Positions 1,327-64,000 of a stretch of DNA of 64,000 nucleotides are shown piece by piece; the stretch's first letter is position 1; each line of letters begins with the position of its first letter. This DNA comes from Euprymna scolopes (lineage: Eukaryota): the NCBI GenBank assembly GCA_053919585.1, contig CM132790.1. One strand, given 5' to 3'. The translations under genes and the position numbers were made by a program. The notes beneath the pieces were generated by a model that saw nothing but the letters and a program-made list of their open reading frames with translations, was not told where the DNA came from and did not search any database.

Positions 1327-1531
1327 TTGTTTCTTTGATACAAAGTTTAACAGAAGTTTTCACTTCAACAGGAAACTGAGGATTTCTAGGAATAATTGTA
1401 ATTCTCAGTACTGTTTCATCTGTACCAGCTGGAATGTTGACAGGTTTGTTATAATTTGCTGTGACCTTAGTTGGTGTAGGTATTAATCTTGCTGGAGTAG
1501 TTTCTGCCAGAGGTACACCTGTAGTCACTTT
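1327..1531 (-). CDS. Exon D unit 1 (KVTTGVPLAET...LRITIIPRNPQFPVEVKTSVKLCIKET), C-terminal half of globular module
   Basis: Acceptor tttctacAG, donor GTgagt, 205 nt, phase 0-1. Confidence 0.88.
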
Positions 1532-4500: not shown

Positions 4501-7500
4501 CATATATTTTATATATGTGACAATATTCAAGTAAATTAATTTTTGTTATATAAAATGCTTCTTTAATAATTACTAACGGTATCTTTATGGTGTTGTCCGA
4601 GATTTAGTTGCATTATTTTAACTTTTAGTTTGTTTGCAAATATCTAAATTGGAAGTAAACAGATTCTATTTAATTTTTCAATTTTAGAAAATACTTTTTC
4701 CGTTTCTTAATTCATATTTGCTATTGATAAGCTAACATTTTATATAATCATTTGTATGATCTGTATAAGTAAGTTTTCAAATAGCTATGTACGTTATTTT
4801 ATTGCCCCGGACATGAAAAACAATAAGCATGAAAATTATCAATGAAAAGGTAAGTCAACATTTGCTTCATAAATTATAGTCGAGTCTGACTTTAAAAATC
4901 CGACAATGCAACTTTATATGTTGGATAAACCCAGAATGATTAAATTGAATCATCACATCTGCAAAAATCATTTGGATGGGAAATTAACATGGTTAACTGT
5001 TGTAGGGGCTTATCTGTTGGTCAATAATGGACTCTTCCTACTATAAAGACTGGGAGAATGTGCCTCTTGACGTTATAAACAACTGTTGTAGTGTACGCCT
5101 TATGGAGAAAAATAAACTCTTATTATAAAGACCGGAATATTAAACCTTTCAGTATTATGCACAAGTCATGCACACTTGGTGATCAGGCTGCTGATTACAA
5201 AAGTTTGAAATCTTTGCTTTTCCTATCAAAGTCGCACCAACAATTTTCCAGCAAGTTATGGACACTTTGTTGGAGGAACTTCATTTTTACGATCGCTTAC
5301 TGACATGAAATCTTAATAAATAGTAAAAGTATTGAAACGCTGGAAACATGCCCAAAGTGTGTTTTCACAAATATGGGACTATGGGCTCAAAATAAAAATA
5401 AGAAGAATGTGATTTCTTCATGAAAGAACTCAAATATCTGGGTCATATCATAGATAAAGACGACAGGTGGCCAGATTCTGAATGGACCACTACAATTAAA
5501 GAGATGTCATCTATTAAAAGGTTACGTCTATGAAGAGTTTCCTGAGATTAGAAAATTATTACCAAGCATTTATTGCACACAGTTCTCCATCTTTTACTGA
5601 AAAACTTTATAAAAATAAGGTTTGGAAATTGACACTCATTGTTCAAGAATACATGTGACATTTGATGGACCGTAAGAAGAGTTCTGCTATCTTATTATAG
5701 TAGATAGTTACATAAAATTGCTAGAATATTTAGATGTATGGAAAACATTACATAGGAAATGATAAACCTCTGGCATGAATTGTTGGTCTGATTTGGGGTT
5801 TGATCAATGATTGATAACAGAACTCAATTAACGTTGACTGATTTTGAAGTGCTGTGTAACAATTTCCAAATAAAACACATTAGCACCTCTCTGTACCATC
5901 CCTGTTAAAACGGCCAGGCAAAGCGTTTTGATCGACACCCTAAAAAAACTCCTAAAACATTGCGGCACGCCTAGAGAAAAGGCCTTAAAGCAATTTTTAT
6001 GAGTGTATAGGATGATACTAAGCACAAAGATAAATCTTCATTATATCCAGCAGAATTGGTGTTTGCTCGAAAAATGAAGATCAGTATTTTAAAAAATTGC
6101 TGCCTAAACAAAGCATGGGCGAACATCTAAAGTACCAAAGAATCAGTACATTCCAGGTGAAAAGATGTTTTTTAAGATATGTAAAACAATACATTCTTTT
6201 GAGTATATGTTACTATAGAAAAGAATATCGGAAATATAGTCTACATAATCTGAGGCTCTCAGTAATCAAATTAGAAATCAGCTCTTAGATGAAACTTACA
6301 GTACGTTACAGGAACATGTAGCAATAGATGCCATTTATGACACCTTAGACCTGGAAATATTTAAAACAGCCCCAGAAGAGCAACACTCCTAAAGAAAAAC
6401 AAAAGTTGTTAGACCTTATCAGGATCAACCCAAAGAGAAAATGATACCGAGACTCCTGCAAAGTTAAGGTCTGGGAGGGAGGTTGTTGTAGTGCTCATCT
6501 TACAAATAATAATGAATGCTTCCTATTACTATAAAGACGTGAAGAACTTACCTTACAGCGTTATGCACAAAGTACGCATACATGGCAGTTGGACTGATGT
6601 ATAACCATTCTTTTTATTTGTTTTATTTATTTTCCTGTTTAGTATATTTTGTTTCAAGTAAATCTAAAATTGTGTCTTTCTTTATGACCCTTCTTGTGTA
6701 CAACAATAACTGAATATGTTATGCTTAATCTTATGTCAAAGAGAATATCAGTATGTCACTGAAATGCAATGGGTAAACTTAGTCGCGATTGCTATATAAT
6801 ATGATAAATTAAAGTAAATAATATTATGTTTGGCATATGATAACGATGAAAAGATAATTTTTTATTAGTATCGAACATTATTATGCAGCAAATACAATGT
6901 TTAAACGGAATTCTTCTATGGACATGCATAGAAAAGCATACAAATATACACAGACATATGCATATTTAAATATCAACATCTATGCATATACAAATATATG
7001 AGAATTTGGAAATACAAGATATATACTGCAAAACCTTCAAACTTTTTTTATTTTTCAAATAACTTTTTTTATACTGCTTTTTCACCCTAAACGAGGCACA
7101 ATACCACTTGGGCCTAACGGGCTACTATGTAGGATCAAATTTGCAATGATACTAAATAGGGAGTTGAGCAGCAGAATGTCTGTTCATATTACATTTGAAC
7201 TTCTGCATGTCATTACAGTCAGGATAGCAGGAACTCGAGAGGGAATTTCCAAATATAACCGTTTGGGAAAAGAAATTATTTGAGTAGAAGGCTTTTTAGC
7301 ATCTATGAATGTTTATAGTTTAAGAGTGGGATTTTTCTGCTTGTTGGGTTAGTCAAGAGTATTTACATCGATTGCTAAATATGCTTGCAGTTTGCCAGAG
7401 CATTTTCTATTAAAATACTTGTAAAATAGGCACATGGAGGCAATATTGAGGCAGTGGGACAGAGGTTAGAATTTGGTTGACAGTGCAGGACCTATTAGGT

Positions 7501-10500
7501 TGGCGACTCTATTTTGAACCCTGTATAGGAGTGAGAAAATAGTAGCAGATTAACTATCCCAGATGTGACAACAATACTCCATGCATAAGCGAATGGTGGC
7601 CTTGTAGAAGTACAGGATACTCTCGGACATGAGTAATTTTCTAGCATGATAGAGAGAGCTCATCTTCTTCCCAGCAGCTTGGCAATGCCCTCAATATATG
7701 TGCTCTAATTCATGTTCCCTGTGAACATTTAACCAAGGAATTTGAATGAAAAGATTTCAGGTAGCGCATCATTAGTCATGGCTATAAGTGGCTGAAAAGA
7801 TTTCTTGTAATTATAAAAGGAAATAAGCTTAGTCTTACCAGCATTGAATGTTACCATCCATTTATGACTTTGGTCCACCACAGACTGGATGGCTTCCTCT
7901 TAAGTTTCAGCCATTTCCTTAGATATGTGTACATTTGTTTTCCCGTCATGTCTGTTACAGAGCATGGTGTCATCAGCAAATATGGAAATCTCAGAGAAAT
8001 ATGGCATCCCTGTGCCTGTTTTACAAGTACTTTAATGGAAAGTGTTCAGACAGACTCAAATTACTGGGTCTCCTCAGCATAAATGCCTGCGACAAACCCA
8101 ACTGGAAATTCAACTTATAAATAGTGCAACAAACAGCAAAATCCCACCCCAACATTGTAAAGATTCCTAGATGCCAGAACTCCTTCTACTCAAATAGCTT
8201 CTTTCAAACTGCTAGACTTATTTCCCTCCCAGGCCCCTGCTTCCCTGACTCTATTGATATGTAGAAGTTCAAGTGTAATGTGAATAGACATTTCGCTACC
8301 CAACTCCCTACAGTGTGTCCGTGCAAATTTCGTCCCAAATAGTAGCCCCTTATGTCTTAGTGGTACTGTGCATATTTGGGGTGAAAAATCAGATAAAAAA
8401 GGTTAGTTTCACATAGTGCTAAGATACCTGGGAAATTCGCTAGGAGAAATGATTCTACATAGTTTAAGTTTAAATAATTTCAACTGTTACCCTGAAAAAA
8501 TACTGAATCAATATGCACAGTTAAATGTTTTAGGTTATTGCTTTCATAAAATTACTTAGTATTTTGTACCATCTTCAAATATAATAAAAGTGAAGTGATT
8601 ATATGCAAGAGAATGTTGGAGCAAACTTCAGAAATAATTAAATTTTAATATTTGTTAAAATTTGCGTTTAATTTTAAAAAAAGGTAATGTAGTAATATTC
8701 ATTCTGACGTGACAGATTTGTTTTGACAATTAGGAATTTACATTGAAATTGAAGAAATAATGCACACTTGCATCGTTGACTTATTGTGTCAAAATAATAA
8801 AGAGTCATATAGGTAGGGACTCTTGCATGCCACACATTTTAAAGCCTTTTACCTGTATTTTTTGTTCAAAAGGAGACACAAAAAATCCAGGCAGTGCTGT
8901 TTTAATCTCAAAATGTAAGCGACTCCAGTTGATGGAGAGTGATAGTTCTGGGCCAGATAGTGGTTAGATATTTCAAATGGGAAAATCAGGATTTGAAAGA
9001 AAAATATTTCAATCACTTGGGCTTAAATATGATACTCCGTTCTCTCCCTCCCTCTTTCTATCTTTCTCTATCTCGGTCGTGTTTTGCCTAAAAGTGAAGA
9101 ATTGTAAATTAGTTAGCGTTTAGATGCACCTCGTGATGGTGTGGTCACTAGCTAAGCACAAAGTTCGAGCTCAGAGTAAATAATCGTTCTTACATGCTTA
9201 AAAAAATTTCTAAATATATAAGAAAATGTATGTTGCTCATTTTATATAGCATTTGATGACAGAAGATTTGGCATTTTAGAAATAACGAAAACAGAGACCT
9301 CAGAAAAATCCCAACAAAACGCAGGTGGCATAATGTAAATGATTTTGATTAAAGATGATGTGCCTATCAACTTTAAGTGATAAATGTAGGGAGCTGGGCG
9401 TAACATCAGTAGAAATATCAAGAACATACCAAGCTTACCCTCCAGCAGCAAACTATCGGGTTATATTGGGCTGATAATACTCTGCATTTTAAATCCAACA
9501 CAATGAGGGATTTGTGTTTAATAAAGGAAACGTTATTACTCACTTGTTTCTTTGATACAAAGTTTAACAGAAGTTTTCACTACAACAGGAAACTGAGGAT
9601 TTCTAGGAATAATTGTAATTCTCAGTACTGTTTCATCTGTACCAGCTGGAATGTTGACAGGTTTGTTATAATTTGCTGTGACCTTAGTTGGTGTAGGTAT
9701 TAATCTTGCTGGAGTAGTTTCTGCCAGAGGTACACCTGTAGTCACTTTCTGTAGAAAACACAGTAATAATGTACAATTATAAGAAGTCAATATAAAATAT
9801 AAAGTAAAACACAGGTGACGATGTAAAATAGCGTTTACTTTCGGTTTCAATCAGCCAAGTGAAATACACGTTTGACGTGACATTGAGTAAACTAAAAAAC
9901 AATAAGGTAACAGAATTTTTCATGCCATACTTGCGTTAAACTAAGAACGTAATAAATGTGCTATGTACGTTAGGAGATGTAAAAATTTACCTGTGTAGTT
10001 GTCAGAAATTCAACAAGGTATTTTTGAACATTATCTGTATCGATAAGCTGAATTACACCGCCACCTGTCATCGAATCTCCAACCGTGATTGTGACCACTC
10101 TGTCTTGTTGTGTATATGTTAACCATCCAGTACCACTTGGTCTGATGTCTCCGGGATTTCCACTCGGTTCCAATGTAATAGCACTATCAGGCAATACAAT
10201 ATCATCATCCATCCCTTCCAAAAGTGTACACGTCACTATGAGGAAAGAGTTAAGCAAAAATTAAAATCGTCAAAAGCTGGTAGTTTTGTCAATTTGTCTA
10301 TTGAGAATTTTGACTTGGAACATGCACATTGAGAAAAATAGATAAGAGAAACTTGAAAAATACCGTATAAGCTGTTAGAATATATTTGATTATATCAACA
10401 AGTATATACTTTTGATTTAATTTAGTGAACTTATAACAAACTGAAAAATTTTTCTAAAATTGCAAAGTTAGGTCCTTTTAGACTTTATGAAAATAACATA

Positions 10501-13500
10501 TATTTGTGCTTTAGATAACAGATAAATTATGAGCTAAAAAAAGAAATAGATGTTTATGCCTAGAAAATAGAGATGTATGTGTGCAGAAATATATTATTCA
10601 AAATATATATATGGTGGTTGTGTGGTTGTATTAAGTTTGGTATATTCAAAAAAATAAACATATAATATTGAAATGTAAATTATATGAGTTTAATATATAC
10701 ATGGTTTATCAATATACACAGTTTGAAGTGAAAAGTTATTGCTCACAGGAATTTCATTAGTATCTTTATATTACCCTCAAATATAAAAATCTGCTGTGAT
10801 ATATGCTAGGGTATATTTAAGAAAATTTCAAAATAATTACATTTAAATATTCATCTAATTTAGTGTTCAATTTTTGTAAGATAAACATAGTTATTTCCAG
10901 TTCTACATAGCAACTAGCATATTCTTTTGATTTAATTTAGTGAAATTATTAATAAAAATGAAGATTAATTTCTAAAATTGCAAATTTAGATCCTTTTAGA
11001 GTTTATGAAAGTGACATATACTTTAGCATCAGTGGCAAAAACAGATAAATTATAGGCTAAAAACGAAATAGATGTTTATGCATATAAACAGAGAGACATG
11101 TGTGTAGAGACATAGGAATTGGAATATATACCTGGTGGTTGTGTTGTTACCGTAGGAGATGGTGGTGGAACACCTGCAGTTGTCGTTGTGGCACCTGGTG
11201 CTGGTGTTGACCTTGCTGGTACTGATGTAGTTACACCTGGTCCTGGTGTTGATATAGCTGCAAAATATTTTTATATTAAGCATATTAACAGTGATTCTTA
11301 TTAGAAAAGTCAATTGACGGCTTATGCTGAAGTCATCTTAACAAGAAATTGAACCTTAGAGAAACTTGTAATTAGTGTCTCATGACTAAAAAAGAAATCA
11401 AATGCAGGTGTAGAATATATGAATTTACAAAGTGAAGGTATAGTTACATGTATCTGTATACTTTCTTAAAATACTCCTAAATAAAATTAAATTTGGCAAA
11501 CATTTATTATTGATGTCTAATCATTATTGTTAAATCTGAAAAAAAAACTGAAATTTTGAAAATATTTATTATTGATGTCTAATCCTTATTGGTAAAATCT
11601 GACAAAAATCACAGATATCCAAATTTAAACAATGACATCCTTGCCTTTTCTTTTGTGCTTTACACAAAATTCGATTGAACTAACGGTTAAATTCATTGCA
11701 GAAACTTATGACTTGAAACGTATTTCAAATTATATAATGACTAATTTCTTAATAACGATTCATGGAAAATGCACAAATGTACACAGATGTATGCATATGT
11801 AAATATCAATATCTATGCATATGAGAATCCATGAGATTTTGGAAATTCAACTTATAAATACTGCAAAAGTTTAAAGTTCGTTATATTAAAAAAAATATAA
11901 CACTGAAATGTAAATTAATGTGTTTAATATATATATATGGTTTATCAATATACACAGTTTGAAATTAAAAGCTGTTGCTCTGAGGAATTTCATTAGTATC
12001 TTTATATTACCCTCAAATATAAAAATCTGCTGTGATATATCCTAGGGAATATTGAAGAAAATTAAAAAGAAATATATATTTAAATATTCATCTAATGTTG
12101 TGTTAAATTTTTATAAGATAAACGTAGTTATTTTCACTTCTATATAGCAACAAGCATATTCTTTTGATTTAATTTAGTGAAATTATCCAAAAAATGAAGA
12201 TAAATTTCTAAAATTGCAAAGTTAGATCCTTTTAGATTTTATGAAATTAACGTATGCTTTGGCTTCCGTGGCAAAAACAGGTAAATTATAGGCTAGAAAC
12301 GAAATAGATGTTTATGCATATAAACAGAGAGAAATGTGTGCAGAAACATAGGAATTGAAATATATACCTGGTGGTTGTGTGGTTGCACCAGGAGCTGGCG
12401 TTGTGAAAACTGGAGGTTTTATTGTTGACATAGAAGGTGGCGTTGGCATACCTTCAGCTGTCGTTGTGGCACCTGGTGCTGGTGTTGACCTTGCTGGTAC
12501 TGATGTAGTTACACCTGGTCCTGGTGTTGATATAGCTGAAAAATATTTTTATATTAAGCATATTAACAGTTATTCTTATTAGAAAAGTCAATTAATAGCT
12601 TATGCTGAACACTATCTAAGAACACTGCCGAATACATAAAGTGAATTTGTGTGAAATTTCATAAAAATCGATCCAGACACAGATAAAGTTGATTTTATAT
12701 AATAGTAGAGAAACATATATTTTATATATGTGACAATATTCAAGTAAATTAATTTTTGTTATATAAAATGCTTCTTTAATAATTACTAACGGTATCTTTA
12801 TGGTGTTGTCCGAGATTTAGTTGCATTATTTTAACTTTTAGTTTGTTTGCAAATATCTAAATTGGAAGTAAACAGATTCTATTTAATTTTTCAATTTTAG
12901 AAAATACTTTTTCCGTTTCTTAATTCATATTTGCTATTGATAAGCTAACATTTTATATAATCATTTGTATGATCTGTATAAGTAAGTTTTCAAATAGCTA
13001 TGTACGTTATTTTATTGCCCCGGACATGAAAAACAATAAGCATGAAAATTATCAATGAAAAGGTAAGTCAACATTTGCTTCATAAATTATAGTCGAGTCT
13101 GACTTTAAAAATCCGACAATGCAACTTTATATGTTGGATAAACCCAGAATGATTAAATTGAATCATCACATCTGCAAAAATCATTTGGATGGGAAATTAA
13201 CATGGTTAACTGTTGTAGGGGCTTATCTGTTGGTCAATAATGGACTCTTCCTACTATAAAGACTGGGAGAATGTGCCTCTTGACGTTATAAACAACTGTT
13301 GTAGTGTACGCCTTATGGAGAAAAATAAACTCTTATTATAAAGACTGGAATATTAAACCTTTCAGTATTATGCACAAGTCATGCACACTTGGTAATCAGG
13401 CTGCTGATTACAAAAGTTTGAAATCTTTGCTTTTCCTATCAAAGTCGCACCAACAATTTTCCAGCAAGTTATGGACACTTTGTTGGAGGAACTTCATTTT

Positions 13501-52500: not shown

Positions 52501-55500
52501 TTATATAGTATTTGATGACAGAAGATTTGGCATTTTAGAAATAACGAAAACAGAGACCTCAGAAAAATCCCAACAAAACGCAGGTGGCATAATGTAAATG
52601 ATTTTGATTAAAGATGATGTGCCTATCAACTTTAAGTGATAAATGTAGGGAGCTGGGCGTAACATCAGTAGAAATATCAAGAACATACCAAGCTTACCCT
52701 CCAGCAGCAAACTATCGGGTTATATTGGGCTGATAATACTCTGCATTTTAAATCCAACACAATGAGGGATTTGTGTTTAATAAAGGAAACGTTATTACTC
52801 ACTTGTTTCTTTGATACAAAGTTTAACAGAAGTTTTCACTACAACAGGAAACTGAGGATTTCTAGGAATAATTGTAATTCTCAGTACTGTTTCATCTGTA
52901 CCAGCTGGAATGTTGACAGGTTTGTTATAATTTGCTGTGACCTTAGTTGGTGTAGGTATTAATCTTGCTGGAGTAGTTTCTGCCAGAGGTACACCTGTAG
53001 TCACTTTCTGTAGAAAACACAGTAATAATGTACAATTATAAGAAGTCAATATAAAATATAAAGTAAAACACAGGTGACGATGTAAAATAGCGTTTACTTT
53101 CGGTTTCAATCAGCCAAGTGAAATACACGTTTGACGTGACATTGAGTAAACTAAAAAACAATAAGGTAACAGAATTTTTCATGCCATACTTGCGTTAAAC
53201 TAAGAACGTAATAAATGTGCTATGTACGTTAGGAGATGTAAAAATTTACCTGTGTAGTTGTCAGAAATTCAACAAGGTATTTTTGAACATTATCTGTATC
53301 GATAAGCTGAATTACACCGCCACCTGTCATCGAATCTCCAACCGTGATTGTGACCACTCTGTCTTGTTGTGTATATGTTAACCATCCAGTACCACTTGGT
53401 CTGATGTCTCCGGGATTTCCACTCGGTTCCAATGTAATAGCACTATCAGGCAATACAATATCATCATCCATCCCTTCCAAAAGTGTACACGTCACTATGA
53501 GGAAAGAGTTAAGCAAAAATTAAAATCGTCAAAAGCTGGTAGTTTTGTCAATTTGTCTATTGAGAATTTTGACTTGGAACATGCACATTGAGAAAAATAG
53601 ATAAGAGAAACTTGAAAAATGCCGTATAAGCTGTGAGAATATATTTGATTATATCAACAAGTATATACTTTTGATTTAATTTAGTGAACTTATTACAAAC
53701 TGAAAAATTTTTCTAAAATTGCAAAGTTAGGTCCTTTTAGACTTTATGAAAATAACATATATTTGTGCTTTAGATAACAGATAAATTATGAGCTAAAAAA
53801 AGAAATAGATGTTTATGCCTAGAAAATAGAGATGTATGTGTGCAGAAATATATTATTCAAAATATATATATGGTGGTTGTGTGGTTGTATTAAGTTTGGT
53901 ATATTCAAAAAAATAAACATATAATATTGAAATGTAAATTATATGAGTTTAATATATACATGGTTTATCAATATACACAGTTTGAAGTGAAAAGTTATTG
54001 CTCTCAGGAATTTCATTAGTATCTTTATATTACCCTCAAATATAAAAATCTGCTGTGATATATGCTAGGGTATATTTAAGAAAATTTCAAAATAATTACA
54101 TTTAAATATTCATCTAATTTAGTGTTCAATTTTTGTAAGATAAACATAGTTATTTCCAGTTCTACATAGCAACTAGCATATTCTTTTGATTTAATTTAGT
54201 GAGATTATTAATAAAAATGAAGATTAATTTCTAAAATTGCAAATTTAGATCCTTTTAGAGTTTATGAAAGTGACATATACTTTAGCATCAGTGGCAAAAA
54301 CAGATAAATTATAGGCTAAAAACGAAATAGATGTTTATGCATATAAACAGAGAGACATGTGTGTAGAGACATAGGAATTGGAATATATACCTGGTGGTTG
54401 TGTTGTTACCGTAGGAGATGGTGGTGGAACACCTGCAGTTGTCGTTGTGGCACCTGGTGCTGGTGTTGACCTTGCTGGTACTGATGTAGTTACACCTGGT
54501 CCTGGTGTTGATATAGCTGAAAGATATTTTTATATTAAGCATATTAACAGTGATTCTTATTAGAAAAGTCAATTGACGGCTTATGCTGAAGTCATCTTAA
54601 CAAGAAATTGAACCTTAGAGAAACTTGTAATTAGTGTCTCATGACTAAAAAAGAAATCAAATGCAGGTGTAGAATATATGAATTTACAAAGTGAAGGTAT
54701 AGTTACATGTATCTGTATACTTTCTTAAAATACTCCTAAATAAAATTAAATTTGGTAAACATTTATTATTGATGTCTAATCATTATTGTTAAATCTGAAA
54801 AAAAAACTGAAATTTTGAAAATATTTATTATTGATGTCTAATCCTTATTGGTAAAATCTGACAAAAATCACAGATATCCAAATTTAAACAATGACATCCT
54901 TGCCTTTTCTTTTGTGCTTTACACAAAATTCGATTGAACTAACGGTTAAATTCATTGCAGAAACTTATGACTTGAAACGTATTTCAAATTATATAATGAC
55001 TAATTTCTTAATAACGATTCATGGAAAATGCACAAATGTACACAGATGTATGCATATGTAAATATCAATATCTATGCATATGAGAATCCATGAGATTTTG
55101 GAAATTCAACTTATAAATACTGCAAAAGTTTAAAGTTCGTTATATTAAAAAAAATATAACACTGAAATGTAAATTAATGTGTTTAATATATATATATGGT
55201 TTATCAATATACACAGTTTGAAATTAAAAGCTGTTGCTCTGAGGAATTTCATTAGTATCTTTATATTACCCTCAAATATAAAAATCTGCTGTGATATATC
55301 CTAGGGAATATTGAAGAAAATTAAAAAAAAATATATATTTAAATATTCATCTAATGTAGTGTTAAATTTTTATAAGATAAACGTAGTTATTTTCACTTCT
55401 ATATAGCAACAAGCATATTCTTTTGATTTAATTTAGTGAAATTATCCAAAAAATGAAGATAAATTTCTAAAATTGCAAAGTTAGATCCTTTTAGATTTTA

Positions 55501-58500
55501 TGAAATTAACGTATGCTTTGGCTTCCGTGGCAAAAACAGGTAAATTATAGGCTAGAAACGAAATAGATGTTTATGCATATAAACAGAGAGAAATGTGTGC
55601 AGAAACATAGGAATTGAAATATATACCTGGTGGTTGTGTGGTTGCACCAGGAGCTGGCGTTGTGAAAACTGGAGGTTTTATTGTTGACATAGAAGGTGGC
55701 GTTGGCATACCTTCAGCTGTCGTTGTGGCACCTGGTGCTGGTGTTGACCTTGCTGGTACTGATGTAGTTACACCTGGTCCTGGTGTTGAAATAGCTGAAA
55801 AATATTTTTATATTAAGCATATTAACAGTGATTCTTATTAGAAAAGTCAATTAATAGCTTATGCTGAAGTCATCTTAACAAGAAATTGAACCTCAGAGAA
55901 ATATGTAATTAGTGTCTCATGACTAAAATAGAAATCAAATGCAGGTGTAGAATATATGAATTTACAAAGTGAACGTATAGCTACATGTATCTGTATACTT
56001 CCTTAATATACTCCTAAATAAATATTTATTATTCATGTCTAATCCTTATTGTTAAAATCTGACAAAAATCACAGATATCCACATTTAAATAATGACATCC
56101 TTGCATTATTTTTTGCTTTTCACAAAATTCGATTGAACTAACGCTTAAATTCATTACAGAAACTTATGCCTTGCAACTTATTTCAAATTATATAATAATT
56201 AATTACTTAATAACGATTCATGGAAAATGCACAAATGTATACAGCATATGTATATGCATATGTAAATATCAATATCTATGCATATGAGAATCCAGAAGAT
56301 TTTGGAAATTCAACTTATAAATAGTTCAAAGGTATTTAGTTTGGTATATTAAAAAAAATATAAAGATAACACTGAAATGTAAATTAATGAGTTTAATATA
56401 TACATGGTTTATCAATATACACAGTTTGAAGTGTAAAGTTATTGCTCTCAGGAATTTCATTAGTATCTTTATATTACCCTCAAATATAAAAATCTGCTGT
56501 GATATATGCTAGGGAATATTGAAGAAAATTTAAAAAGAAATATATATTTAAATAGTCATCTAATTTAGTGTTCAATTTTTGTAAAATAAACGTAGTTATT
56601 TACAGTTCCACATAGCAACAAGCATATTCTTTTGATTTAATTTAGTGCAATTATTAAAAAAATGAATATTAATTTCTAAAATTGCAAAGTTAGATCCCTT
56701 TAGAGTTTATGAAATTAACATATACATTTGCATCAGTGGCAAAAACAGGTAAATTATAGGCAACAAACGAAATAGATGTTTAGGCATATACAGAGAGAGA
56801 CATGTGTGCAGAAACATAGGAATTGAAATATATACCTGGTGGTTGTGTGGTTGCACCAGGAGCTGACGTTGAGATACCTGGAGGTTGTGTTGTTACGCTA
56901 GGAGATGGTGGTGGAACACCTGCAGTTGTCCTTGTGGCACCTGGTGCTGGTGTTGACCTTGCTGGTACTGATGTAGTTACACCTGGTCCTGGTGTTGATA
57001 TAGCTGAAAGATATTTTTATATTAAGCATATTAACAGTGATTCTTATTAGAAAAGTGAATTGATGGCTTATGCTGAAGTGGTCTTCACAAGAAATTGAAA
57101 CTCAGAGAAACTTGTAATTAGTGTCTAATGACAAAAAAAGAAATCAAATGCAGGTGTAGAATATATGAATTTACAAATTGAAGGTATAGCTACTTGTGTC
57201 TGTGTACTTCCTTAAAATACTCCCAAATAAAATGAAATTTGGCAAACATTTATTATTGATGTCTAATCCTTATTGGTAAAATCTGACAAAAATCACAGAT
57301 ATCCAAATTTAAACAATGACATCCTTGCCTTTTCTTTTGTGCTTTACACAAAATTCGATTGAACTAACGGTTAAATTCATTGCAGAAACTTATGACTTGA
57401 AACTTATTTCAAATTATATAATGACTAATTTCTTAATAACGATTCATGGAAAATGCACAAATGTACACAGATGTATGCATATGTAAATATCAATATCTAT
57501 GCATATGAGAATCCATGAGATTTTGGAAATTCAACTTATAAATACTGCAAAAGTTTAAAGTTCGTTATATTAAAAAAAATATAACACTGAAATGTAAATT
57601 AATGTGTTTATATATATATATGGTTTATCAATATACACAGTTTGAAATTAAAAGCTGTTGCTCTGAGGAATTTCATTAGTATCTTTATATTACCCTCAAA
57701 TATAAAAATCTGCTGTGATACATCCTAGGAGATATTGAAGAAAATTTAAAAAAAATATATATTTAAATATTCATCTAATGTTGTGTTAAATTTTTATAAG
57801 ATAAACGTAGTTATTTTCACTTCTATATAGCAACAAGCATATTCTTTTGATTTAATTTAGTGAAATTATCCAAAAAATGAAGATAAATTTCTAAAATTGC
57901 AAAGTTAGATCCTTTTAGATTTTATGATATTAACGTATGCTTTGGCTTCCGTGGTAAAAACAGGTAAATTATAGGCTAGAAACGAAATAGATGTTTATGC
58001 ATATAAACAGAGAGAAATGTGTGCAGAAACATAGGAATTGAAATATATACCTGGTGGTTGTGTGGTTGCACCAGGAGCTGGCGTTGTGAAAACTGGAGGT
58101 TTTATTGTTGACATAGAAGGTGGCGTTGGCATACCTTCAGCTGTCGTTGTGGCACCTGGTGCTGGTGTTGACCTTGCTGGTACTGATGTAGTTACACCTG
58201 GTCCTGGTGTTGATATAGCTGAAAAATATTTTTATATTAAGCATATTAACAGTTATTCTTATTAGAAAAGTCAATTAATAGCTTATGCTGAACACTATCT
58301 AAGAACACTGCCGAATACATAAAGTGAATTTGTGTGAAATTTCATAAAAATCGATCCAGACACAGATAAAGTTGATTTTATATAATAGTAGAGAAACATA
58401 TATTTTATATATGTGATAATATTCAAGTAAATTAATTTTTGTTATATAAAATGCTTCTTTAATAATTACTAACGGTATCTTTATGGTGTTGTCCGAGATT

Positions 58501-61500: not shown

Positions 61501-64000
61501 TACTCTCGGACATGAGTAATTTTCTAGCATGATAGAGAGAGCTCATCTTCTTCCCAGCAGCTTGGCAATGCCCTCAATATATGTGCTCTAATTCATGTTC
61601 CCTGTGAACATTTAACCAAGGAATTTGAATGAAAAGATTTCAGGTAGCGCATCATTAGTCATGGCTATAAGTGGCTGAAAAGATTTCTTGTAATTATTAA
61701 AGGAAATAAGCTTAGTCTTAGCAGCATTGAATGTTACCATCCATTTATGACTTTGGTCCACCACAGACTGGATGGCTTCCTCTTAAGTTTCAGCCATTTC
61801 CTTAGATATGTGTACATTTGTTTTCCCGTCATGTCTGTTACAGAGCATGGTGTCATCAGCAAATATGGAAATCTCAGAGAAATATGGCATCCCTGTGCCT
61901 GTTTTACAAGTACTTTAATGGAAAGTGTTCAGACAGACTCAAATTACTGGGTCTCCTCAGCATAAATGCCTGCGACAAACCCAACTGGAAATTCAACTTA
62001 TAAATAGTGCAACAAACAGCAAAATCCCACCCCAACATTGTAAAGATTCCTAGATGCCAGAACTCCTTCTACTCAAATAGCTTCTTTCAAACTGCTAGAC
62101 TTATTTCCCTCCCAGGCCCCTGCTTCCCTGACTCTATTGATATGTAGAAGTTCAAGTGTAATGTGAATAGACATTTCGCTACCCAACTCCCTACAGTGTG
62201 TCCGTGCAAATTTCGTCCCAAATAGTAGCCCCTTATGTCTTAGTGGTACTGTGCATATTTGGGGTGAAAAATCAGATAAAAAAGGTTAGTTTCACATAGT
62301 GCTAAGATACCTGGGAAATTCGCTAGGAGAAATGATTCTACATAGTTTAAGTTTAAATAATTTCAACTGTTACCCTGAAAAAATACTGAATCAATATGCA
62401 CAGTTAAATGTTTTAGGTTATTGCTTTCATAAAATTACTTAGTATTTTGTACCATCTTCAAATATAATAAAAGTGAAGTGATTATATGCAAGAGAATGTT
62501 GGAGCAAACTTCAGAAATAATTAAATTTTAATATTTGTTAAAATTTGCGTTTAATTTTAAAAAAAGGTAATGTAGTAATATTCATTCTGACGTGACAGAT
62601 TTGTTTTGACAATTAGGAATTTACATTGAAATTGAAGAAATAATGCACACTTGCATCGTTGACTTATTGTGTCAAAATAATAAAGAGTCATATAGGTAGG
62701 GACTCTTGCATGCCACACATTTTAAAGCCTTTTACCTGTATTTTTTGTTCAAAAGGAGACACAAAAAATCCAGGCAGTGCTGTTTTAATCTCAAAATGTA
62801 AGCGACTCCAGTTGATGGAGAGTGATAGTTCTGGGCCAGATAGTGGTTAGATATTTCAAATGGGAAAATCAGGATTTGAAAGAAAAATATTTCAATCACT
62901 TGGGCTTAAATATGATACTCCGTTCTCTCCCTCCCTCTTTCTATCTTTCTCTATCTCGGTCGTGTTTTGCCTAAAAGTGAAGAATTGTAAATTAGTTAGC
63001 GTTTAGATGCACCTCGTGATGGTGTGGTCACTAGCTAAGCACAAAGTTCGAGCTCAGAGTAAATAATCGTTCTTACATGCTTAAAAAAATTTCTAAATAT
63101 ATAAGAAAATGTATGTTGCTCATTTTATATAGCATTTGATGACAGAAGATTTGGCATTTTAGAAATAACGAAAACAGAGACCTCAGAAAAATCCCAACAA
63201 AACGCAGGTGGCATAATGTAAATGATTTTGATTAAAGATGATGTGCCTATCAACTTTAAGTGATAAATGTAGGGAGCTGGGCGTAACATCAGTAGAAATA
63301 TCAAGAACATACCAAGCTTACCCTCCAGCAGCAAACTATCGGGTTATATTGGGCTGATAATACTCTGCATTTTAAATCCAACACAATGAGGGATTTGTGT
63401 TTAATAAAGGAAACGTTATTACTCACTTGTTTCTTTGATACAAAGTTTAACAGAAGTTTTCACTACAACAGGAAACTGAGGATTTCTAGGAATAATTGTA
63501 ATTCTCAGTACTGTTTCATCTGTACCAGCTGGAATGTTGACAGGTTTGTTATAATTTGCTGTGACCTTAGTTGGTGTAGGTATTAATCTTGCTGGAGTAG
63601 TTTCTGCCAGAGGTACACCTGTAGTCACTTTCTGTAGAAAACACAGTAATAATGTACAATTATAAGAAGTCAATATAAAATATAAAGTAAAACACAGGTG
63701 ACGATGTAAAATAGCGTTTACTTTCGGTTTCAATCAGCCAAGTGAAATACACGTTTGACGTGACATTGAGTAAACTAAAAAACAATAAGGTAACAGAATT
63801 TTTCATGCCATACTTGCGTTAAACTAAGAACGTAATAAATGTGCTATGTACGTTAGGAGATGTAAAAATTTACCTGTGTAGTTGTCAGAAATTCAACAAG
63901 GTATTTTTGAACATTATCTGTATCGATAAGCTGAATTACACCGCCACCTGTCATCGAATCTCCAACCGTGATTGTGACCACTCTGTCTTGTTGTGTATAT
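1327..64000 (-). CDS. Internal part of a giant spliced mucin-like repeat protein gene (PTS-rich exons alternating with a ~150-aa Cys-bounded, discoidin/F5/8C-like module); runs off both window ends
   Basis: Manually spliced GT-AG exons per unit in transcript order A(168 nt, phase 1-1)[-E(168)-A(168)]-B(126, 1-1)-C(245, 1-0)-D(205, 0-1). Unit coding length is 744 or 1080 nt, both multiples of 3. No stops, and no exon indels seen although introns have many. Confidence 0.88.
1774..2018 (-). CDS. Exon C unit 1 (TCTLLEGMDDDIVLPDSAIT...IRPSGTGW...NVQKYLVEFLTTTQ), N-terminal half of globular module
   Basis: Acceptor ctttcctcatAG, donor cag|GTaaat, 245 nt, phase 1-0. Confidence 0.88.
2190..2420 (-). 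pseudogene. Relic of a deleted PTS exon plus its downstream intron segment (present in each complete unit)
   Basis: aatatatata-tggtggttgtgtggttg matches the exon A/E end aatatatacc-tggtggttgtgtggttg with the donor lost; flanking 2190-2390 resembles 2710-2915. Confidence 0.7.
2920..3045 (-). CDS. PTS exon B unit 1 (ISTPGPGVTTSVPARSTPAPGATTTTAGVPPPSPTVTTQPP)
   Basis: Acceptor ttttgcAG, donor ccag|GTatat, 126 nt, phase 1-1, GC-richer than flanks. Confidence 0.87.
4155..4322 (-). CDS. PTS exon A unit 1 (ISTPGPGVTTSVPARSTPAPGATTTAEGMPTPPSMSTIKPPVFTTPAPGATTQPP)
   Basis: Acceptor tttttcAG, donor ccag|GTatat, 168 nt, phase 1-1. Confidence 0.87.
4998..6705 (+). mobile_element. Degenerate, internally deleted Ty3/Gypsy LTR retrotransposon (unit 1)
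   Basis: TGTTGTA...TACAACA termini; flanks ttaac/ataac (5-bp TSD, 1 mismatch); PPT gggagggagg at 6473-6482 before the 3' LTR (6484-6705); RT relic CDFFMKELKYLGHIIDKD and SFLRLENYYQAFI; integrase relic YLIIVDSY, DNRTQL, HISTSLYHPC*NGQAKRF. Confidence 0.88.
7064..7918 (-). mobile_element. 5'-truncated degenerate CR1-like LINE (unit 1; 5' limit approximate)
   Basis: Minus-strand relics KWMVTFNA, LYFYKATIRLCMEYCCHIW, PLSHCLNIASMCLFYKYFNRKCS, SCYPDCNDMQKFKCN match the C-terminus of the intact 971-aa ORF; 3' UTR and A-tail at 7064-7070. Confidence 0.88.
7990..8400 (+). mobile_element. Short 3' fragment of CR1-like LINE, opposite orientation to 7064-7918 (5' limit approximate)
   Basis: RNMASLCLFYKYFNGKCSDRL, FYSNSFFQTARL, KFKCNVNRH; 3' UTR tagtagcccc...ggggtgaaaaatcagataaaaaa matches the reverse complement of the minus copy's UTR. 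Confidence 0.85.
9544..9748 (-). CDS. Exon D unit 2
   Basis: Copy of exon D, splice sites intact (PVVVK variant). Confidence 0.87.
9991..10235 (-). CDS. Exon C unit 2
   Basis: Copy of exon C, splice sites intact. Confidence 0.87.
11132..11257 (-). CDS. PTS exon B unit 2
   Basis: Copy of exon B. Confidence 0.86.
12368..12535 (-). CDS. PTS exon A unit 2
   Basis: Copy of exon A. Confidence 0.86.
13211..14919 (+). mobile_element. Gypsy LTR relic, unit 2 copy
   Basis: Copy of 4998-6705. Confidence 0.86.
15278..16132 (-). mobile_element. CR1-like LINE relic, unit 2 copy
   Basis: Copy of 7064-7918. Confidence 0.85.
16204..16614 (+). mobile_element. Plus-strand LINE 3' fragment copy
   Basis: Copy of 7990-8400. 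Confidence 0.82.
17758..17962 (-). CDS. Exon D unit 3
   Basis: Copy of exon D. Confidence 0.87.
18205..18449 (-). CDS. Exon C unit 3
   Basis: Copy of exon C. Confidence 0.87.
19351..19476 (-). CDS. PTS exon B unit 3
   Basis: Copy of exon B. Confidence 0.86.
20587..20754 (-). CDS. PTS exon A (second in transcript order) unit 3
   Basis: Copy of exon A. Confidence 0.86.
21796..21963 (-). CDS. PTS exon E unit 3 (ISTPGPGVTTSVPARSTPAPGATRTTAGVPPPSPSVTTQPPGISTSAPGATTQPP)
   Basis: Acceptor tctttcAG, donor ccag|GTatat, 168 nt, phase 1-1; only in long units. Confidence 0.86.
23011..23178 (-). CDS. PTS exon A (first in transcript order) unit 3
   Basis: Copy of exon A. Confidence 0.86.
23854..25544 (+). 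mobile_element. Gypsy LTR relic, unit 3 copy (18-bp deletion in 3' LTR)
   Basis: Copy of 4998-6705. Confidence 0.86.
25903..26757 (-). mobile_element. CR1-like LINE relic, unit 3 copy
   Basis: Copy of 7064-7918. Confidence 0.85.
26829..27239 (+). mobile_element. Plus-strand LINE 3' fragment copy
   Basis: Copy of 7990-8400. Confidence 0.82.
28382..28586 (-). CDS. Exon D unit 4
   Basis: Copy of exon D. Confidence 0.87.
28829..29073 (-). CDS. Exon C unit 4
   Basis: Copy of exon C. Confidence 0.87.
29972..30097 (-). CDS. PTS exon B unit 4
   Basis: Copy of exon B. Confidence 0.86.
31209..31376 (-). CDS. PTS exon A unit 4
   Basis: Copy of exon A. Confidence 0.86.
32223..35383 (-). mobile_element. 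Young, apparently intact single-ORF CR1-like LINE inserted in the E-A intron of unit 4 only
   Basis: 3158 extra bp relative to the empty site gatttaattt|agtgc in units 3, 5 and 6. Poly(A) tail (T19 at 32223-32241), ~120-nt 3' UTR, ~90-nt 5' leader. Confidence 0.95.
32364..35279 (-). CDS. LINE polyprotein: apurinic-like endonuclease + reverse transcriptase (CR1/Jockey-group non-LTR retrotransposon), intact 971 aa
   Basis: APE motifs SNIRGL, LSET, GDFN, LDLFLT, SDH. RT motifs KATGPDGI, YRPISLL, QYGFR, LDISKAFDRV, GVPQGSILGP, YADD, LLG. C-terminal RPRMEYCCHIW and FFLRTARLWN. Confidence 0.96.
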   Translation of the reverse strand: MTSFKKKYTIKPGSPTSNVDPYYHVSFSNIRGLRSNLPEVETQLQETKPDLLFLSETGIGQAISLDEFAITGYSNLTSKSDPQDCHGHGICAYIKDSFPCGRDISREDPNLPYMCFWVALAHTTAFIFTLYRPHNSGVTIFQNISEKIDQVLSTYPSANIHVCGDFNVHNVEWLTHSNKTDDEGRFCHDFSIAYDLTQIVQEPTRVPDNDGQYASLLDLFLTTCPELCSVSVLSPLGSSDHSVVSIKIKMKCNKSPDVPLHRTVYRYTKADWDSFRTFISDLPLHSMFKKDVSSIVLDLTEWLIVGIDHFIPSKKFQQKPNSQPWFSPECAAAIAHRNHFFHCFKRNRCMETKAVFRTASNHCKKVIRNARELYAQSVKSKVAEQRLGSHQFWQIANRILNRSVCSIPTIINGPEVISSASDKAKLFVKNFAANSTLCDQDRQPPIFPPVSENTLCDIRISVRDVAKLIKNLDSSKATGPDGIPIIVLKKLQPELAPILTKLFKRCLKENSFPSPWKISSVCPVFKNSGDRSSPSQYRPISLLCVMSKLLESVLNTEVIKHLNKNNLLSDTQYGFRSARSTADVLTVISHRISKSLDGGNLSRAIALDISKAFDRVWHKVLLHKIASYGIAGKVFSIIKSFLSDRFIRVVVEGQKSEAHSINAGVPQGSILGPTLFLIYINDLPNHILTSFVDIYADDTTIYGTTSKTVNEQVLSNSLSSDLEHVVQWGKEWLVTFNASKTKLLSLHHQHFNPHLSSIEMNGSRLQEASSFDKLLGLTITPDLKWNTYIKFVAKAAGKMVGSFYRSSRYLTADAILYLYKSQVRPRMEYCCHIWAGAARKDLSCLDRVQNRLRSLVGDVLFSSLQPLSHRRDVASLSLMYRYFHGKCSTELQSMVPPRQTFTRNTRLAVNTINNFPHSLSVPKPKHRFHEQSFFLRTARLWNCLPFSCFPADYNMVVFKSKVNKFLMSRSI
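35576..35743 (-). CDS. PTS exon E unit 4 (immediately upstream of intact LINE in transcript direction)
   Basis: Copy of exon E. Confidence 0.86.
36791..36958 (-). CDS. PTS exon A unit 4
   Basis: Copy of exon A. Confidence 0.86.
37634..39324 (+). mobile_element. Gypsy LTR relic, unit 4 copy (18-bp deletion in 3' LTR)
   Basis: Copy of 4998-6705. Confidence 0.86.
39683..40537 (-). mobile_element. CR1-like LINE relic, unit 4 copy
   Basis: Copy of 7064-7918. Confidence 0.85.
40609..41019 (+). mobile_element. Plus-strand LINE 3' fragment copy
   Basis: Copy of 7990-8400. Confidence 0.82.
42163..42367 (-). CDS. Exon D unit 5
   Basis: Copy of exon D. Confidence 0.87.
42610..42854 (-). CDS. Exon C unit 5
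   Basis: Copy of exon C. Confidence 0.87.
43752..43877 (-). CDS. PTS exon B unit 5
   Basis: Copy of exon B, one synonymous change (GCC>GCT Ala). Confidence 0.86.
44988..45155 (-). CDS. PTS exon A unit 5
   Basis: Copy of exon A. Confidence 0.86.
46199..46366 (-). CDS. PTS exon E unit 5
   Basis: Copy of exon E. Confidence 0.86.
47414..47581 (-). CDS. PTS exon A unit 5
   Basis: Copy of exon A. Confidence 0.86.
48256..49964 (+). mobile_element. Gypsy LTR relic, unit 5 copy
   Basis: Copy of 4998-6705. Confidence 0.86.
50323..51177 (-). mobile_element. CR1-like LINE relic, unit 5 copy
   Basis: Copy of 7064-7918. Confidence 0.85.
51249..51659 (+). mobile_element. Plus-strand LINE 3' fragment copy
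   Basis: Copy of 7990-8400. Confidence 0.82.
52803..53007 (-). CDS. Exon D unit 6
   Basis: Copy of exon D. Confidence 0.87.
53250..53494 (-). CDS. Exon C unit 6
   Basis: Copy of exon C. Confidence 0.87.
54391..54516 (-). CDS. PTS exon B unit 6
   Basis: Copy of exon B, with E-type acceptor (tctttcAG). Confidence 0.86.
55627..55794 (-). CDS. PTS exon A unit 6
   Basis: Copy of exon A, synonymous ATA>ATT Ile. Confidence 0.86.
56836..57003 (-). CDS. PTS exon E unit 6
   Basis: Copy of exon E. Confidence 0.86.
58051..58218 (-). CDS. PTS exon A unit 6
   Basis: Copy of exon A. Confidence 0.86.
58894..60602 (+). mobile_element. Gypsy LTR relic, unit 6 copy
   Basis: Copy of 4998-6705. Confidence 0.86.
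60961..61801 (-). mobile_element. CR1-like LINE relic, unit 6 copy (14-bp deletion near 61445)
   Basis: Copy of 7064-7918. Confidence 0.85.
61873..62283 (+). mobile_element. Plus-strand LINE 3' fragment copy
   Basis: Copy of 7990-8400. Confidence 0.82.
63427..63631 (-). CDS. Exon D unit 7
   Basis: Copy of exon D. Confidence 0.87.
63874..64000 (-). CDS. Exon C unit 7 (partial, cut by window edge)
   Basis: 3' half of exon C with intact donor. Confidence 0.85.

What the first reader, a model, noticed from the sequence alone, without database searches (positions are those of the whole stretch)
1327..64000. The 64-kb tandem array is the inside of one giant modular mucin-like gene: [PTS linker + Cys-bounded globular domain]n
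Seen: 33 complete minus-strand GT-AG exons splice without a stop across unit boundaries. Exon D ends in phase 1 'A' and the next exon A starts 'CT', giving Thr. Each unit adds 248 aa (short) or 360 aa (long), about 2,050 aa in the window, with no start, signal peptide or stop. The ORF track shows only antisense shadows of the PTS exons. Inference: a beads-on-a-string secreted glycoprotein (mucus, gel, adhesive or egg-coat type) whose length is tuned by duplicating whole 8-10 kb multi-exon cassettes including introns. This differs from the single giant-exon VNTR of vertebrate MUC2/MUC5AC. Such loci are usually collapsed or mis-annotated.
Basis: partly seen in the sequence, partly recalled or inferred. 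Interest (0 to 1): 0.85.

Follow-up and report, generated by a model that had tools for sequence, protein, structure and literature searches.

The report
Giant squid mucin-like gene interior
The whole 64-kb window is the middle of one very large, expressed squid gene for a mucus-type protein: sugar-carrying linkers alternate with small beads folded like a blood-clotting-factor domain, and the gene grew by copying whole 8-10 kb exon-intron blocks, a design already known from human MUC16 and DMBT1.

Summary
On the minus strand, 33 complete GT-AG exons plus one exon cut by the window edge sit in six full cassettes and one partial cassette. The cassettes are 8.2 or 10.6 kb long and 99.3-99.5% identical. 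The 33 exons join in frame into 6,013 nt (2,004 aa, plus 42 aa from the cut exon) with no stop codon.

Contigs from three RNA runs (two labelled poly-A RNA-seq) show the B->C and C->D junctions and the unit-linking D->A junction. The D->A junction skips 5,221 nt with GT..AG ends. Intron depth is about zero, so these are not separate tandem genes.

Each cassette encodes 98 or 210 aa of Pro/Thr/Ser-rich linker (60% P+T+S) plus a 150-aa two-cysteine domain. That domain matches no Pfam family. Relatives occur in octopus (domain + PTS), a chiton 'mucin-2-like' protein (weak partial match) and marine transcripts where it follows VWC/TIL modules. An AlphaFold model of the octopus homologue (pLDDT 91) matches discoidin (F5/8 type C) domains at Z about 12, but no sequence-level link was found.

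The gene ends, signal peptide, secretion and glycosylation were not seen. Multi-exon [domain + PTS] cassettes are already known (MUC16, DMBT1, chicken Muc13), so this is a new variant of a known kind.

The scan has noted the same gene in the adjacent window, and paralogues elsewhere in this genome.

The parts
63427..64000 (-). Partial unit at the 5' edge: exon C cut by the window end (63874-64000) and exon D (63427-63631)
52803..58218 (-). Long cassette 1. Exons: A 58051-58218, E 56836-57003, A 55627-55794, B 54391-54516, C 53250-53494, D 52803-53007
   Evidence: all GT-AG; 360 aa
42163..47581 (-). Long cassette 2. Exons: A 47414-47581, E 46199-46366, A 44988-45155, B 43752-43877, C 42610-42854, D 42163-42367
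28382..36958 (-). Long cassette 3, carrying a LINE in its E->A intron. Exons: A 36791-36958, E 35576-35743, A 31209-31376, B 29972-30097, C 28829-29073, D 28382-28586
   Evidence: this intron is 4,199 nt; the other copies are about 1,041 nt
17758..23178 (-). Long cassette 4. Exons: A 23011-23178, E 21796-21963, A 20587-20754, B 19351-19476, C 18205-18449, D 17758-17962
9544..12535 (-). Short cassette 5. Exons: A 12368-12535, B 11132-11257, C 9991-10235, D 9544-9748
   Evidence: RNA contigs join 9991 to 9748 (C->D) and 9544 to 4322 (D->A)
1327..4322 (-). Short cassette 6, the reference unit. Exons: A 4155-4322, B 2920-3045, C 1774-2018, D 1327-1531
   Evidence: splice sites read directly; 248 aa
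1327..2018 (-). One copy of the 150-aa two-cysteine discoidin-like domain (exon C + 242-nt phase-0 intron + exon D). The intron sits where a Thr/Pro-rich loop begins
   Evidence: phmmer of the spliced domain against octopus P0016: E 6e-28 over the full length. AF2 model of P0016:16-158: pLDDT 91. Z about 12 to neuropilin b1/b2, factor VIII C2 and DDR2 DS
32226..35380 (-). Unit-specific insertion of an intact non-LTR retrotransposon (ORF 32364-35279, 971 aa, endonuclease + reverse transcriptase). It lies in the same orientation as the gene, inside an intron
7150..8350 (-). Old truncated non-LTR retrotransposon fragment (reverse-transcriptase C-terminal part). It lies in this D->A intron and, given the 99% unit identity, most likely in every copy
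   Evidence: frame translations. Very high RNA depth with many mismatches and foreign flanks, i.e. reads from other copies of the element

Best explanation
The window is the interior of a single very large protein-coding gene of a squid, transcribed from the minus strand.

Shown: the gene is built from near-identical genomic cassettes of 8.2 kb (exons A-B-C-D) or 10.6 kb (A-E-A-B-C-D). The cassettes are spliced head to tail (D->A) into one reading frame.

Shown: each cassette encodes a Pro/Thr/Ser-rich linker of 98 or 210 aa, followed by a 150-aa bead with one Cys near each end. The bead belongs to a domain family absent from Pfam. Its fold, modelled on the octopus homologue, is that of discoidin / F5/8 type C domains.

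Inferred: the product is a secreted, heavily O-glycosylated mucus- or gel-type polymer. Stiff glycosylated spacers would hold the discoidin-like beads apart, and the beads would act as binding or cross-linking nodes for glycans, lipids or matrix.

Inferred: the array grew in two steps. First a 1.2-kb PTS exon + intron module was duplicated (copies now about 89% alike). Then whole cassettes were amplified by unequal crossing-over and/or gene conversion (copies now 99.4% alike). Because A, E and B are each phase 1-1, and C+D together are phase 1-1, any such gain or loss keeps the frame, so protein length can change in steps of 248 or 360 aa.
For: - Array structure.
- Exon map, splice sites and stop-free 2,004-aa frame.
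- RNA: joints 9544-4322 (D->A) and 9748-9991 (C->D) in runs X5, X7 and X12. Exon depth is 300-1,240 against about 0 in unique intron sequence. A 559-nt contig spans B-C-D-A; its letters match exon B at every listed difference from exon A.
- Exon copies differ by 0.11% and intron copies by 0.14-1.2%.
- PTS exons are 26% P, 24% T and 11% S.
- Relatives with the same domain-plus-PTS layout exist in Octopus bimaculoides (XP_052821907, XP_052834281). Marine transcripts carry the domain after VWC/TIL modules. A chiton 'mucin-2-like' protein gives only a partial match.
- Fold: AF2 pLDDT 91, pTM 0.84. VIA-align Z 11-12 over about 127 of 143 residues to neuropilin b1/b2, factor V/VIII C domains, retinoschisin and DDR2. 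Atlas structural matches reach TM 0.68-0.70 to F5/8 C proteins.
Against: - The gene's start, signal peptide, stop and any polymerising end domains lie outside the window, so secretion is not shown.
- Glycosylation cannot be tested here.
- The A->B, A->E and E->A junctions were not seen directly; only exact contig ends at the exon A borders support them.
- Short-read contigs cannot show that all cassettes are in one mRNA molecule, or how many are used.
- The copy number in the assembly was not checked against DNA reads.
- The structure model is of the octopus homologue (43% identity to exon C, about 25% to exon D), not of the squid domain itself.
- No sequence-level similarity to discoidin domains was found.
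- The one raw-read poly-A run sampled (X23) had no reads on the exons, so expression is tissue-restricted and the tissue is unknown.
Confidence: 0.78

Rival explanations
1. The units are separate tandem genes, or independent transcripts, each with its own promoter and terminal exon.
For: Tandem near-identical units of 8-10 kb could in principle be a gene family.
Against: No unit has a start or stop exon, and every exon border is phase-compatible with the next unit. RNA contigs in three runs join exon D of one unit to exon A of the next across the 5.2-kb spacer. There is no RNA depth on unique sequence of that spacer.
Confidence: 0.03
2. The gene is real, but the length of the array in this assembly is an artefact: true cassette number is mis-stated through over-expansion or collapse of a 99.4%-identical repeat.
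For: Repeats this similar are hard to assemble, and I could not lay DNA reads on the array (the read-laying cap went on RNA).
Against: The copies are not identical. They come as short and long forms in a fixed order, differ by 0.1-1.2% in substitutions plus small indels, and one copy alone carries a 3.2-kb LINE. This is what a resolved long-read assembly looks like. Unchecked notes on the neighbouring window report the same gene continuing (s1-288442).
Confidence: 0.12
3. The transcript is spliced but is not a mucus protein. For example, it could be a cell-surface adhesion or matrix-receptor protein, or a structural egg-case or adhesive component, in which the Pro/Thr-rich parts are spacers with little glycosylation.
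For: Discoidin-fold domains are best known from receptors and adhesion or coagulation proteins. No signal peptide, VWD or cystine-knot domain is seen in the window. The tissue is unknown.
Against: 60% P+T+S linkers repeated between beads are the defining mucin-domain signature. Relatives carry VWC/TIL modules, and structural neighbours in AlphaFold DB are named CTCK-domain and mucin-5AC-like proteins.
Confidence: 0.15

Closest known systems
Human MUC16 (CA125) tandem-repeat region
   Same: A giant mucin whose repeat region is [globular domain + Ser/Thr-rich linker]n. Each repeat is encoded by its own small set of exons: five exons and about 1.9 kb of genome per 156-aa repeat, with at least 60 repeats (PMC3431878). 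Protein length is set by the number of genomic cassettes.
   Different: The MUC16 bead is a SEA domain, not a discoidin-like fold. Its repeats are diverged rather than 99% identical. Its cassettes are about 1.9 kb, not 8-10 kb. MUC16 is membrane-tethered. No homology is implied.
DMBT1 / gp340 / salivary agglutinin
   Same: A 'mucin hybrid' glycoprotein with tandem SRCR beads interspersed with O-glycosylated Ser/Thr-rich SID linkers. Copy number varies between alleles from 7 to 21 SRCR domains through gain and loss of repeated exon blocks (PMC9038570).
   Different: The beads are SRCR domains, the protein ends in CUB/ZP domains, and it is a vertebrate protein. Polymorphism of the squid array has not been tested.
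Gel-forming mucins MUC2/MUC5AC/MUC5B with CysD domains
   Same: Long PTS stretches are interrupted by small non-glycosylated globular domains that are thought to act as cross-linking nodes (established knowledge). Relatives of the squid domain occur next to VWC/TIL modules.
   Different: In those mucins the PTS and CysD parts lie in one giant exon (PMC1552070 states that PTS domains were until then always found in a single large exon). CysD is a small Cys-rich domain (from my own knowledge), whereas the squid bead has only two Cys. No VWD or CTCK domain is seen in this window.
Chicken Muc13
   Same: Its PTS domain is encoded by many near-identical exons, one repeat per exon, raising the possibility of length control by exon number or splicing (PMC1552070).
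   Different: It has only PTS exons, with no globular bead inside the repeat, and is a small transmembrane mucin.
Discoidin / F5/8 type C domains (neuropilin b1/b2, factor V/VIII C1/C2, DDR, retinoschisin)
   Same: About 150 aa with one Cys near each terminus and a beta-sandwich fold. The best structural matches have Z 11-12, about 127 aligned residues and rmsd about 3 A.
   Different: There is no match to PF00754, nor to any PDB discoidin sequence or profile. Identity in structural alignments is 12-18%. The most conserved motif of the family (PDS-ITL-P-G-P-DIRP-G-GW) is its own.

Membership tests
Mucin / mucin-like protein (functional class) | Long Pro/Thr/Ser-rich (PTS) regions, usually in tandem repeats | tested here: met
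   Exons A, E and B encode 26% P, 24% T and 11% S. This gives 98 or 210 aa of PTS per cassette, repeated 6 times in the window.
Mucin / mucin-like protein (functional class) | Dense O-glycosylation of the PTS regions | not testable with these tools
   Needs glycoproteomics or staining of the purified protein.
Mucin / mucin-like protein (functional class) | Entry into the secretory pathway (signal peptide) | not testable with these tools
   The 5' end of the gene lies beyond window position 64000.
Gel-forming mucins (VWD-C8-TIL ... CTCK) | N-terminal VWD assemblies and a C-terminal cystine knot for polymerisation | tested here: inconclusive
   Neither is present in the window (exon map). Distant relatives of the bead domain sit next to VWC/TIL, and AlphaFold DB neighbours are named CTCK proteins. 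The ends of this gene are unseen.
F5/8 type C (discoidin) domain, Pfam PF00754 | Significant match to the family profile | tested here: not met
   No Pfam hit for the exon C or D pieces at E<=10, nor for the spliced homologues P0016, P0019, P0004 and P0010 at E<=0.01. The family profile against PDB sequences found no discoidin. hhalign against a canonical F5/8 C domain gave probability 1%.
F5/8 type C (discoidin) domain, Pfam PF00754 | Distorted beta-sandwich fold of about 150 residues | tested here: met
   The model of the octopus homologue has pLDDT 91. Z 11-12 to neuropilin b1/b2, FVIII C1/C2, FV C2, DDR2 DS and retinoschisin. TM 0.68-0.70 in the Atlas.
F5/8 type C (discoidin) domain, Pfam PF00754 | Cysteines near the N and C termini that can form the terminal disulfide | tested here: inconclusive
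   One Cys lies at position 3 and one at position 145 of the 150-aa domain. Both are conserved in most relatives. Their distance in the model could not be measured with the tools.
Multi-exon cassette arrays inside one gene (MUC16 / DMBT1 type) | Repeat units that each comprise several exons plus introns and are spliced to one another in frame | tested here: met
   Each cassette has 4 or 6 exons with phase-compatible borders. RNA shows the D->A, C->D and B->C junctions.

The most novel reading that the evidence does not exclude
The discoidin-like bead is the signature of a so far undescribed family of polymer-forming mucins in spiralians (molluscs, probably rotifers and others), built as VWC/TIL - [PTS + bead]n - cystine knot. 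In cephalopods these would be main mucus or egg-jelly scaffolds. Their length would vary between individuals by unequal exchange among 99%-identical cassettes, and possibly between transcripts by skipping of the symmetric phase-1 exons. That would provide a tunable glycan landscape for the microbes these animals cultivate.
Probability: 0.3. Interest if true: 0.6.

Novelty: new variant of a known kind. Interest (0 to 1): 0.45.

Why it matters
[quoted passage not shown] Yet mucus and egg jelly are central to squid-microbe symbioses, adhesion and reproduction.

This locus gives a concrete, RNA-supported gene model for one giant mucin-like protein. In a search of the 1.84 billion cluster representatives (standing for about 15 billion public proteins), no long spliced squid protein appeared. 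Only genomic ORF fragments and distant relatives turned up. The gene therefore appears to be missing from public protein sets.

The locus also defines a domain family that Pfam lacks, links it by fold to discoidin domains, and offers a natural example of protein length evolving by whole exon-intron cassette amplification.

It does not overturn current ideas. Mucins are known to arise convergently by repeat gain (PMC9417175), and cassette arrays are known from MUC16 and DMBT1.

Tried and rejected
- Tandem Repeats Finder found nothing because the periods exceed its 500-nt limit. Self-BLAST was used instead.
- Pfam on single exons returned no hits.
- A word-indexed protein search with exon C returned only two short genomic ORF fragments, because candidates are limited by query length.
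- The 228-kb ENA contig that carries the 54%-identical fragment P0002 could not be fetched.
- The raw-read poly-A run X23 gave no reads on the exons, only on the intronic transposon fragment.
- The family profile against PDB sequences gave only chance hits to designed 'Pizza' proteins.
- Plain Foldseek gave only weak scores (E 4e-4, TM 0.5-0.6). The structural aligner gave clear ones.
- I did not fold the squid domain itself. The spliced sequence has no reference and would have had to be typed in, so the octopus homologue was modelled, with the squid exons as rows of the alignment.
- My quick script for exact LINE borders was thrown off by an indel. The borders given come from the self-BLAST break points.
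- Separate tandem genes and chance ORFs were considered and rejected (see the rival explanations).

Full report
**1. What is in the sequence**

The window is AT-rich (27-40% G+C) and has no gaps. Self-BLAST shows that nearly all of it is a tandem array. Units are 8.2 kb or 10.6 kb long and 99.3-99.5% identical over their whole length. A 1.2-kb sub-repeat inside them is about 89% identical. Tandem Repeats Finder missed the array because its period limit is 500 nt. Notes from the same scan identify the genome as a squid. I did not verify the species.

**2. Exon map**

Minus-strand frame translations show four kinds of open segment per unit. I read the borders directly.
- Exon A is 168 nt: acceptor tttttcag|CT, donor CCAG|gtatat.
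- Exon B is 126 nt, with the same borders as A.
- Exon C is 245 nt: acceptor cctcatag|TG, donor CACAG|gtaaat.
- Exon D is 205 nt: acceptor ttctacag|AAA, donor ACAA|gtgagt.
- Long units carry two extra 168-nt PTS exons, one of a type I call E and one more A.
- Phases are 1-1 for A, E and B, 1-0 for C, and 0-1 for D.

BLAST of the four exons back on the window finds every copy. There are 33 complete exons plus an exon C cut by the window end at 64000. All 33 have AG/GT borders.

Joined in genomic order they give 6,013 nt, which is 2,004 codons without a stop. The cut exon adds 42 aa. A short unit adds 248 aa and a long unit adds 360 aa. From 5' to 3' the window holds a partial unit, four long units and two short units. 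Every number in the finding is therefore reproduced, including the Thr codon A|CT at the D->A junction.

**3. Is it transcribed and spliced this way?**

A run search with one unit found RNA runs that hold about 17-23% of the sampled words. That is close to the exon share of the stretch, which is 25%. I laid four runs on 4151-10150, the stretch that contains exon A of one unit, the 5.2-kb spacer, and exons D and C of the unit upstream.

In three runs (X5, X7 and X12; X7 and X12 are poly-A RNA-seq) the contigs show two joints:
- 9544 to 4322, skipping 5,221 nt with CT..AC ends on the plus strand, i.e. GT..AG on the minus strand. This is the unit-linking D->A junction.
- 9748 to 9991, skipping 242 nt. 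This is the C->D junction.

One 559-nt contig (531 nt in X5) has three parts. It starts with 80 letters that resemble exon A but differ at 14 positions. Then come 84 letters lying beyond the stretch, then exon C, exon D and 30 nt of exon A. The listed differences are exactly the letters of exon B, and the arithmetic fits a direct B->C junction.

Exon depth is 300-1,240. Unique intron sequence has depth about 0. A low-depth contig of the C-D intron (36 against 369) looks like pre-mRNA. Contigs end exactly at both borders of exon A. That fits a branch in the assembly graph, because exon A has several partners (D or E upstream, B or E downstream).

The A->B, A->E and E->A junctions were not seen directly. 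The one raw-read run (X23) had nothing on the exons, so expression is tissue-restricted.

**4. Purifying signal**

Exon copies differ pairwise by 0.11% on average. The six intron classes differ by 0.14-1.2%. The counts are small, but they point the expected way for a functional coding sequence inside a recently amplified or homogenised array.

**5. The protein modules**

The PTS exons encode 26% Pro, 24% Thr and 11% Ser.

Exons C and D together encode a 150-aa module with one Cys at position 3 and one at position 145. Neither half matches Pfam.

I built a profile from exon C and two genomic fragments from other cephalopod-like assemblies. Searched against the 1.84 billion representative proteins, it found 40 hits.
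- Two Octopus bimaculoides proteins are annotated 'uncharacterized'. One is domain + PTS and the other is domain-PTS-domain-PTS.
- A chiton 'mucin-2-like' protein matched, but only over the first 29 profile positions.
- Metatranscriptome and Logan transcripts carry 2-4 copies of the domain after VWC/TIL cysteine-rich modules.
- No long spliced squid protein appeared, so this gene seems absent from public protein sets.

The spliced squid domain matches the octopus domain over its full length (phmmer E 6e-28). The family alignment shows a conserved core, PDS-ITL-P-G-P-DIRP-G-GW ... NVK, plus the two cysteines.

**6. Fold**

I could not submit the spliced squid domain by reference. I therefore modelled the octopus domain (P0016:16-158), using the family alignment with the two squid exons as rows. 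The model is confident (pLDDT 91, pTM 0.84) and all-beta. One low-confidence loop falls where the squid C/D intron and its Thr/Pro-rich stretch lie.

- Foldseek gives weak but consistent hits to the galactose-binding-domain-like superfamily.
- The structural aligner gives Z 11-12, about 127 of 143 residues aligned at about 3 A. The matches are neuropilin b1/b2, factor V/VIII C domains, retinoschisin and DDR2 discoidin domains.
- The Atlas search agrees (TM 0.68-0.70).
- AlphaFold DB cluster neighbours include proteins named 'CTCK domain-containing' and 'Mucin-5AC-like'.

At sequence level there is no link to discoidin. I therefore call the domain discoidin-like by fold, not a member of PF00754.

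**7. How it most likely works**

Shown: one transcription unit, cassette-to-cassette splicing, alternating PTS and bead modules, a discoidin-like fold for the homologous bead, and the same design conserved in octopus.

Inferred: a secreted, heavily O-glycosylated polymer. Extended glycosylated spacers would separate small binding or cross-linking beads, in the way CysD domains punctuate MUC2/MUC5 or SRCR domains punctuate DMBT1.

Inferred: a two-step growth of the array. Duplication of 1.2-kb PTS exon+intron modules came first, followed by amplification or homogenisation of whole cassettes. A truncated LINE fragment in the D->A spacer appears to have been copied along with the cassettes. One intact LINE entered a single cassette later. 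Because A, E and B are each symmetric (phase 1-1) and C+D together are symmetric, unequal exchange or exon skipping would keep the frame.

**8. Comparison with what is known**

The design itself is not new.
- Each 156-aa SEA repeat of MUC16 is encoded by five exons within about 1.9 kb, repeated at least 60 times (PMC3431878).
- DMBT1 alternates SRCR beads with glycosylated SID linkers and varies from 7 to 21 beads between alleles (PMC9038570).
- Mucins are a functional class that arises convergently by repeat gain (PMC9417175).

What is new here is the kind of bead (a Pfam-unlisted, discoidin-fold family), the size and near-identity of the cassettes, and the animal group. Mucin genes are barely described in cephalopods (10.64898/2026.01.08.698421).

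**9. Earlier notes of this scan (unchecked leads)**

- The adjacent downstream window is said to hold the same gene with further beads and a 6.4-kb PTS exon (s1-288442, s1-288661, s1-288468).
- Other loci of this genome are said to hold paralogues. One is read as VWC-(linker + discoidin-like)x11-CTCK (s1-280705). Another has a long mucin loop inside each bead (s1-295490).

These fit my reading and the VWC/TIL context of distant relatives, but I did not test them.

**10. Verdict**

This is a new variant of a known kind, of moderate interest.

Noticed in passing
window 32226-35380 (ORF 32364-35279, minus strand): An intact 971-aa non-LTR retrotransposon ORF (endonuclease + reverse transcriptase; Pfam RVT_1 E 3e-36). 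It is inserted in only one cassette, in the E->A intron, in the same orientation as the host gene. It is younger than the cassette amplification.
   Followed up: partly
window 7150-8350, and most likely the same place in every D->A intron: A truncated reverse-transcriptase fragment of a related LINE in the D->A intron, most likely copied along with the cassettes. RNA contigs pile up on it at very high depth with mismatches, opposite-strand joints and foreign flanks. So the element family is highly expressed elsewhere in the genome.
   Followed up: partly
P0004, P0010, P0015, P0026, P0039, P0044 (JGI/IMG and Logan transcripts, organisms unknown): A second branch of the same domain family. It has 2-4 beads after VWC/TIL modules, joined by acidic or His-rich (HPHDEHH-type) linkers instead of PTS, and ends in a short helical-looking tail. 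P0044 (4,511 aa) also has a canonical F5/8 type C domain near its N terminus.
   Followed up: partly
window 9840-9990: In run X7 a 151-nt contig covers the C-D intron at about a tenth of the depth of the spliced contig. This is probably pre-mRNA or low-level intron retention.
   Followed up: no
runs X7, X12, X17, X18: The poly-A RNA-seq runs that hold the exons at high depth are labelled 'invertebrate metagenome'. That label is typical of host-microbe samples, which hints at expression in a symbiont-housing or jelly-producing organ. Names are coded, so the tissue could not be read.
   Followed up: no
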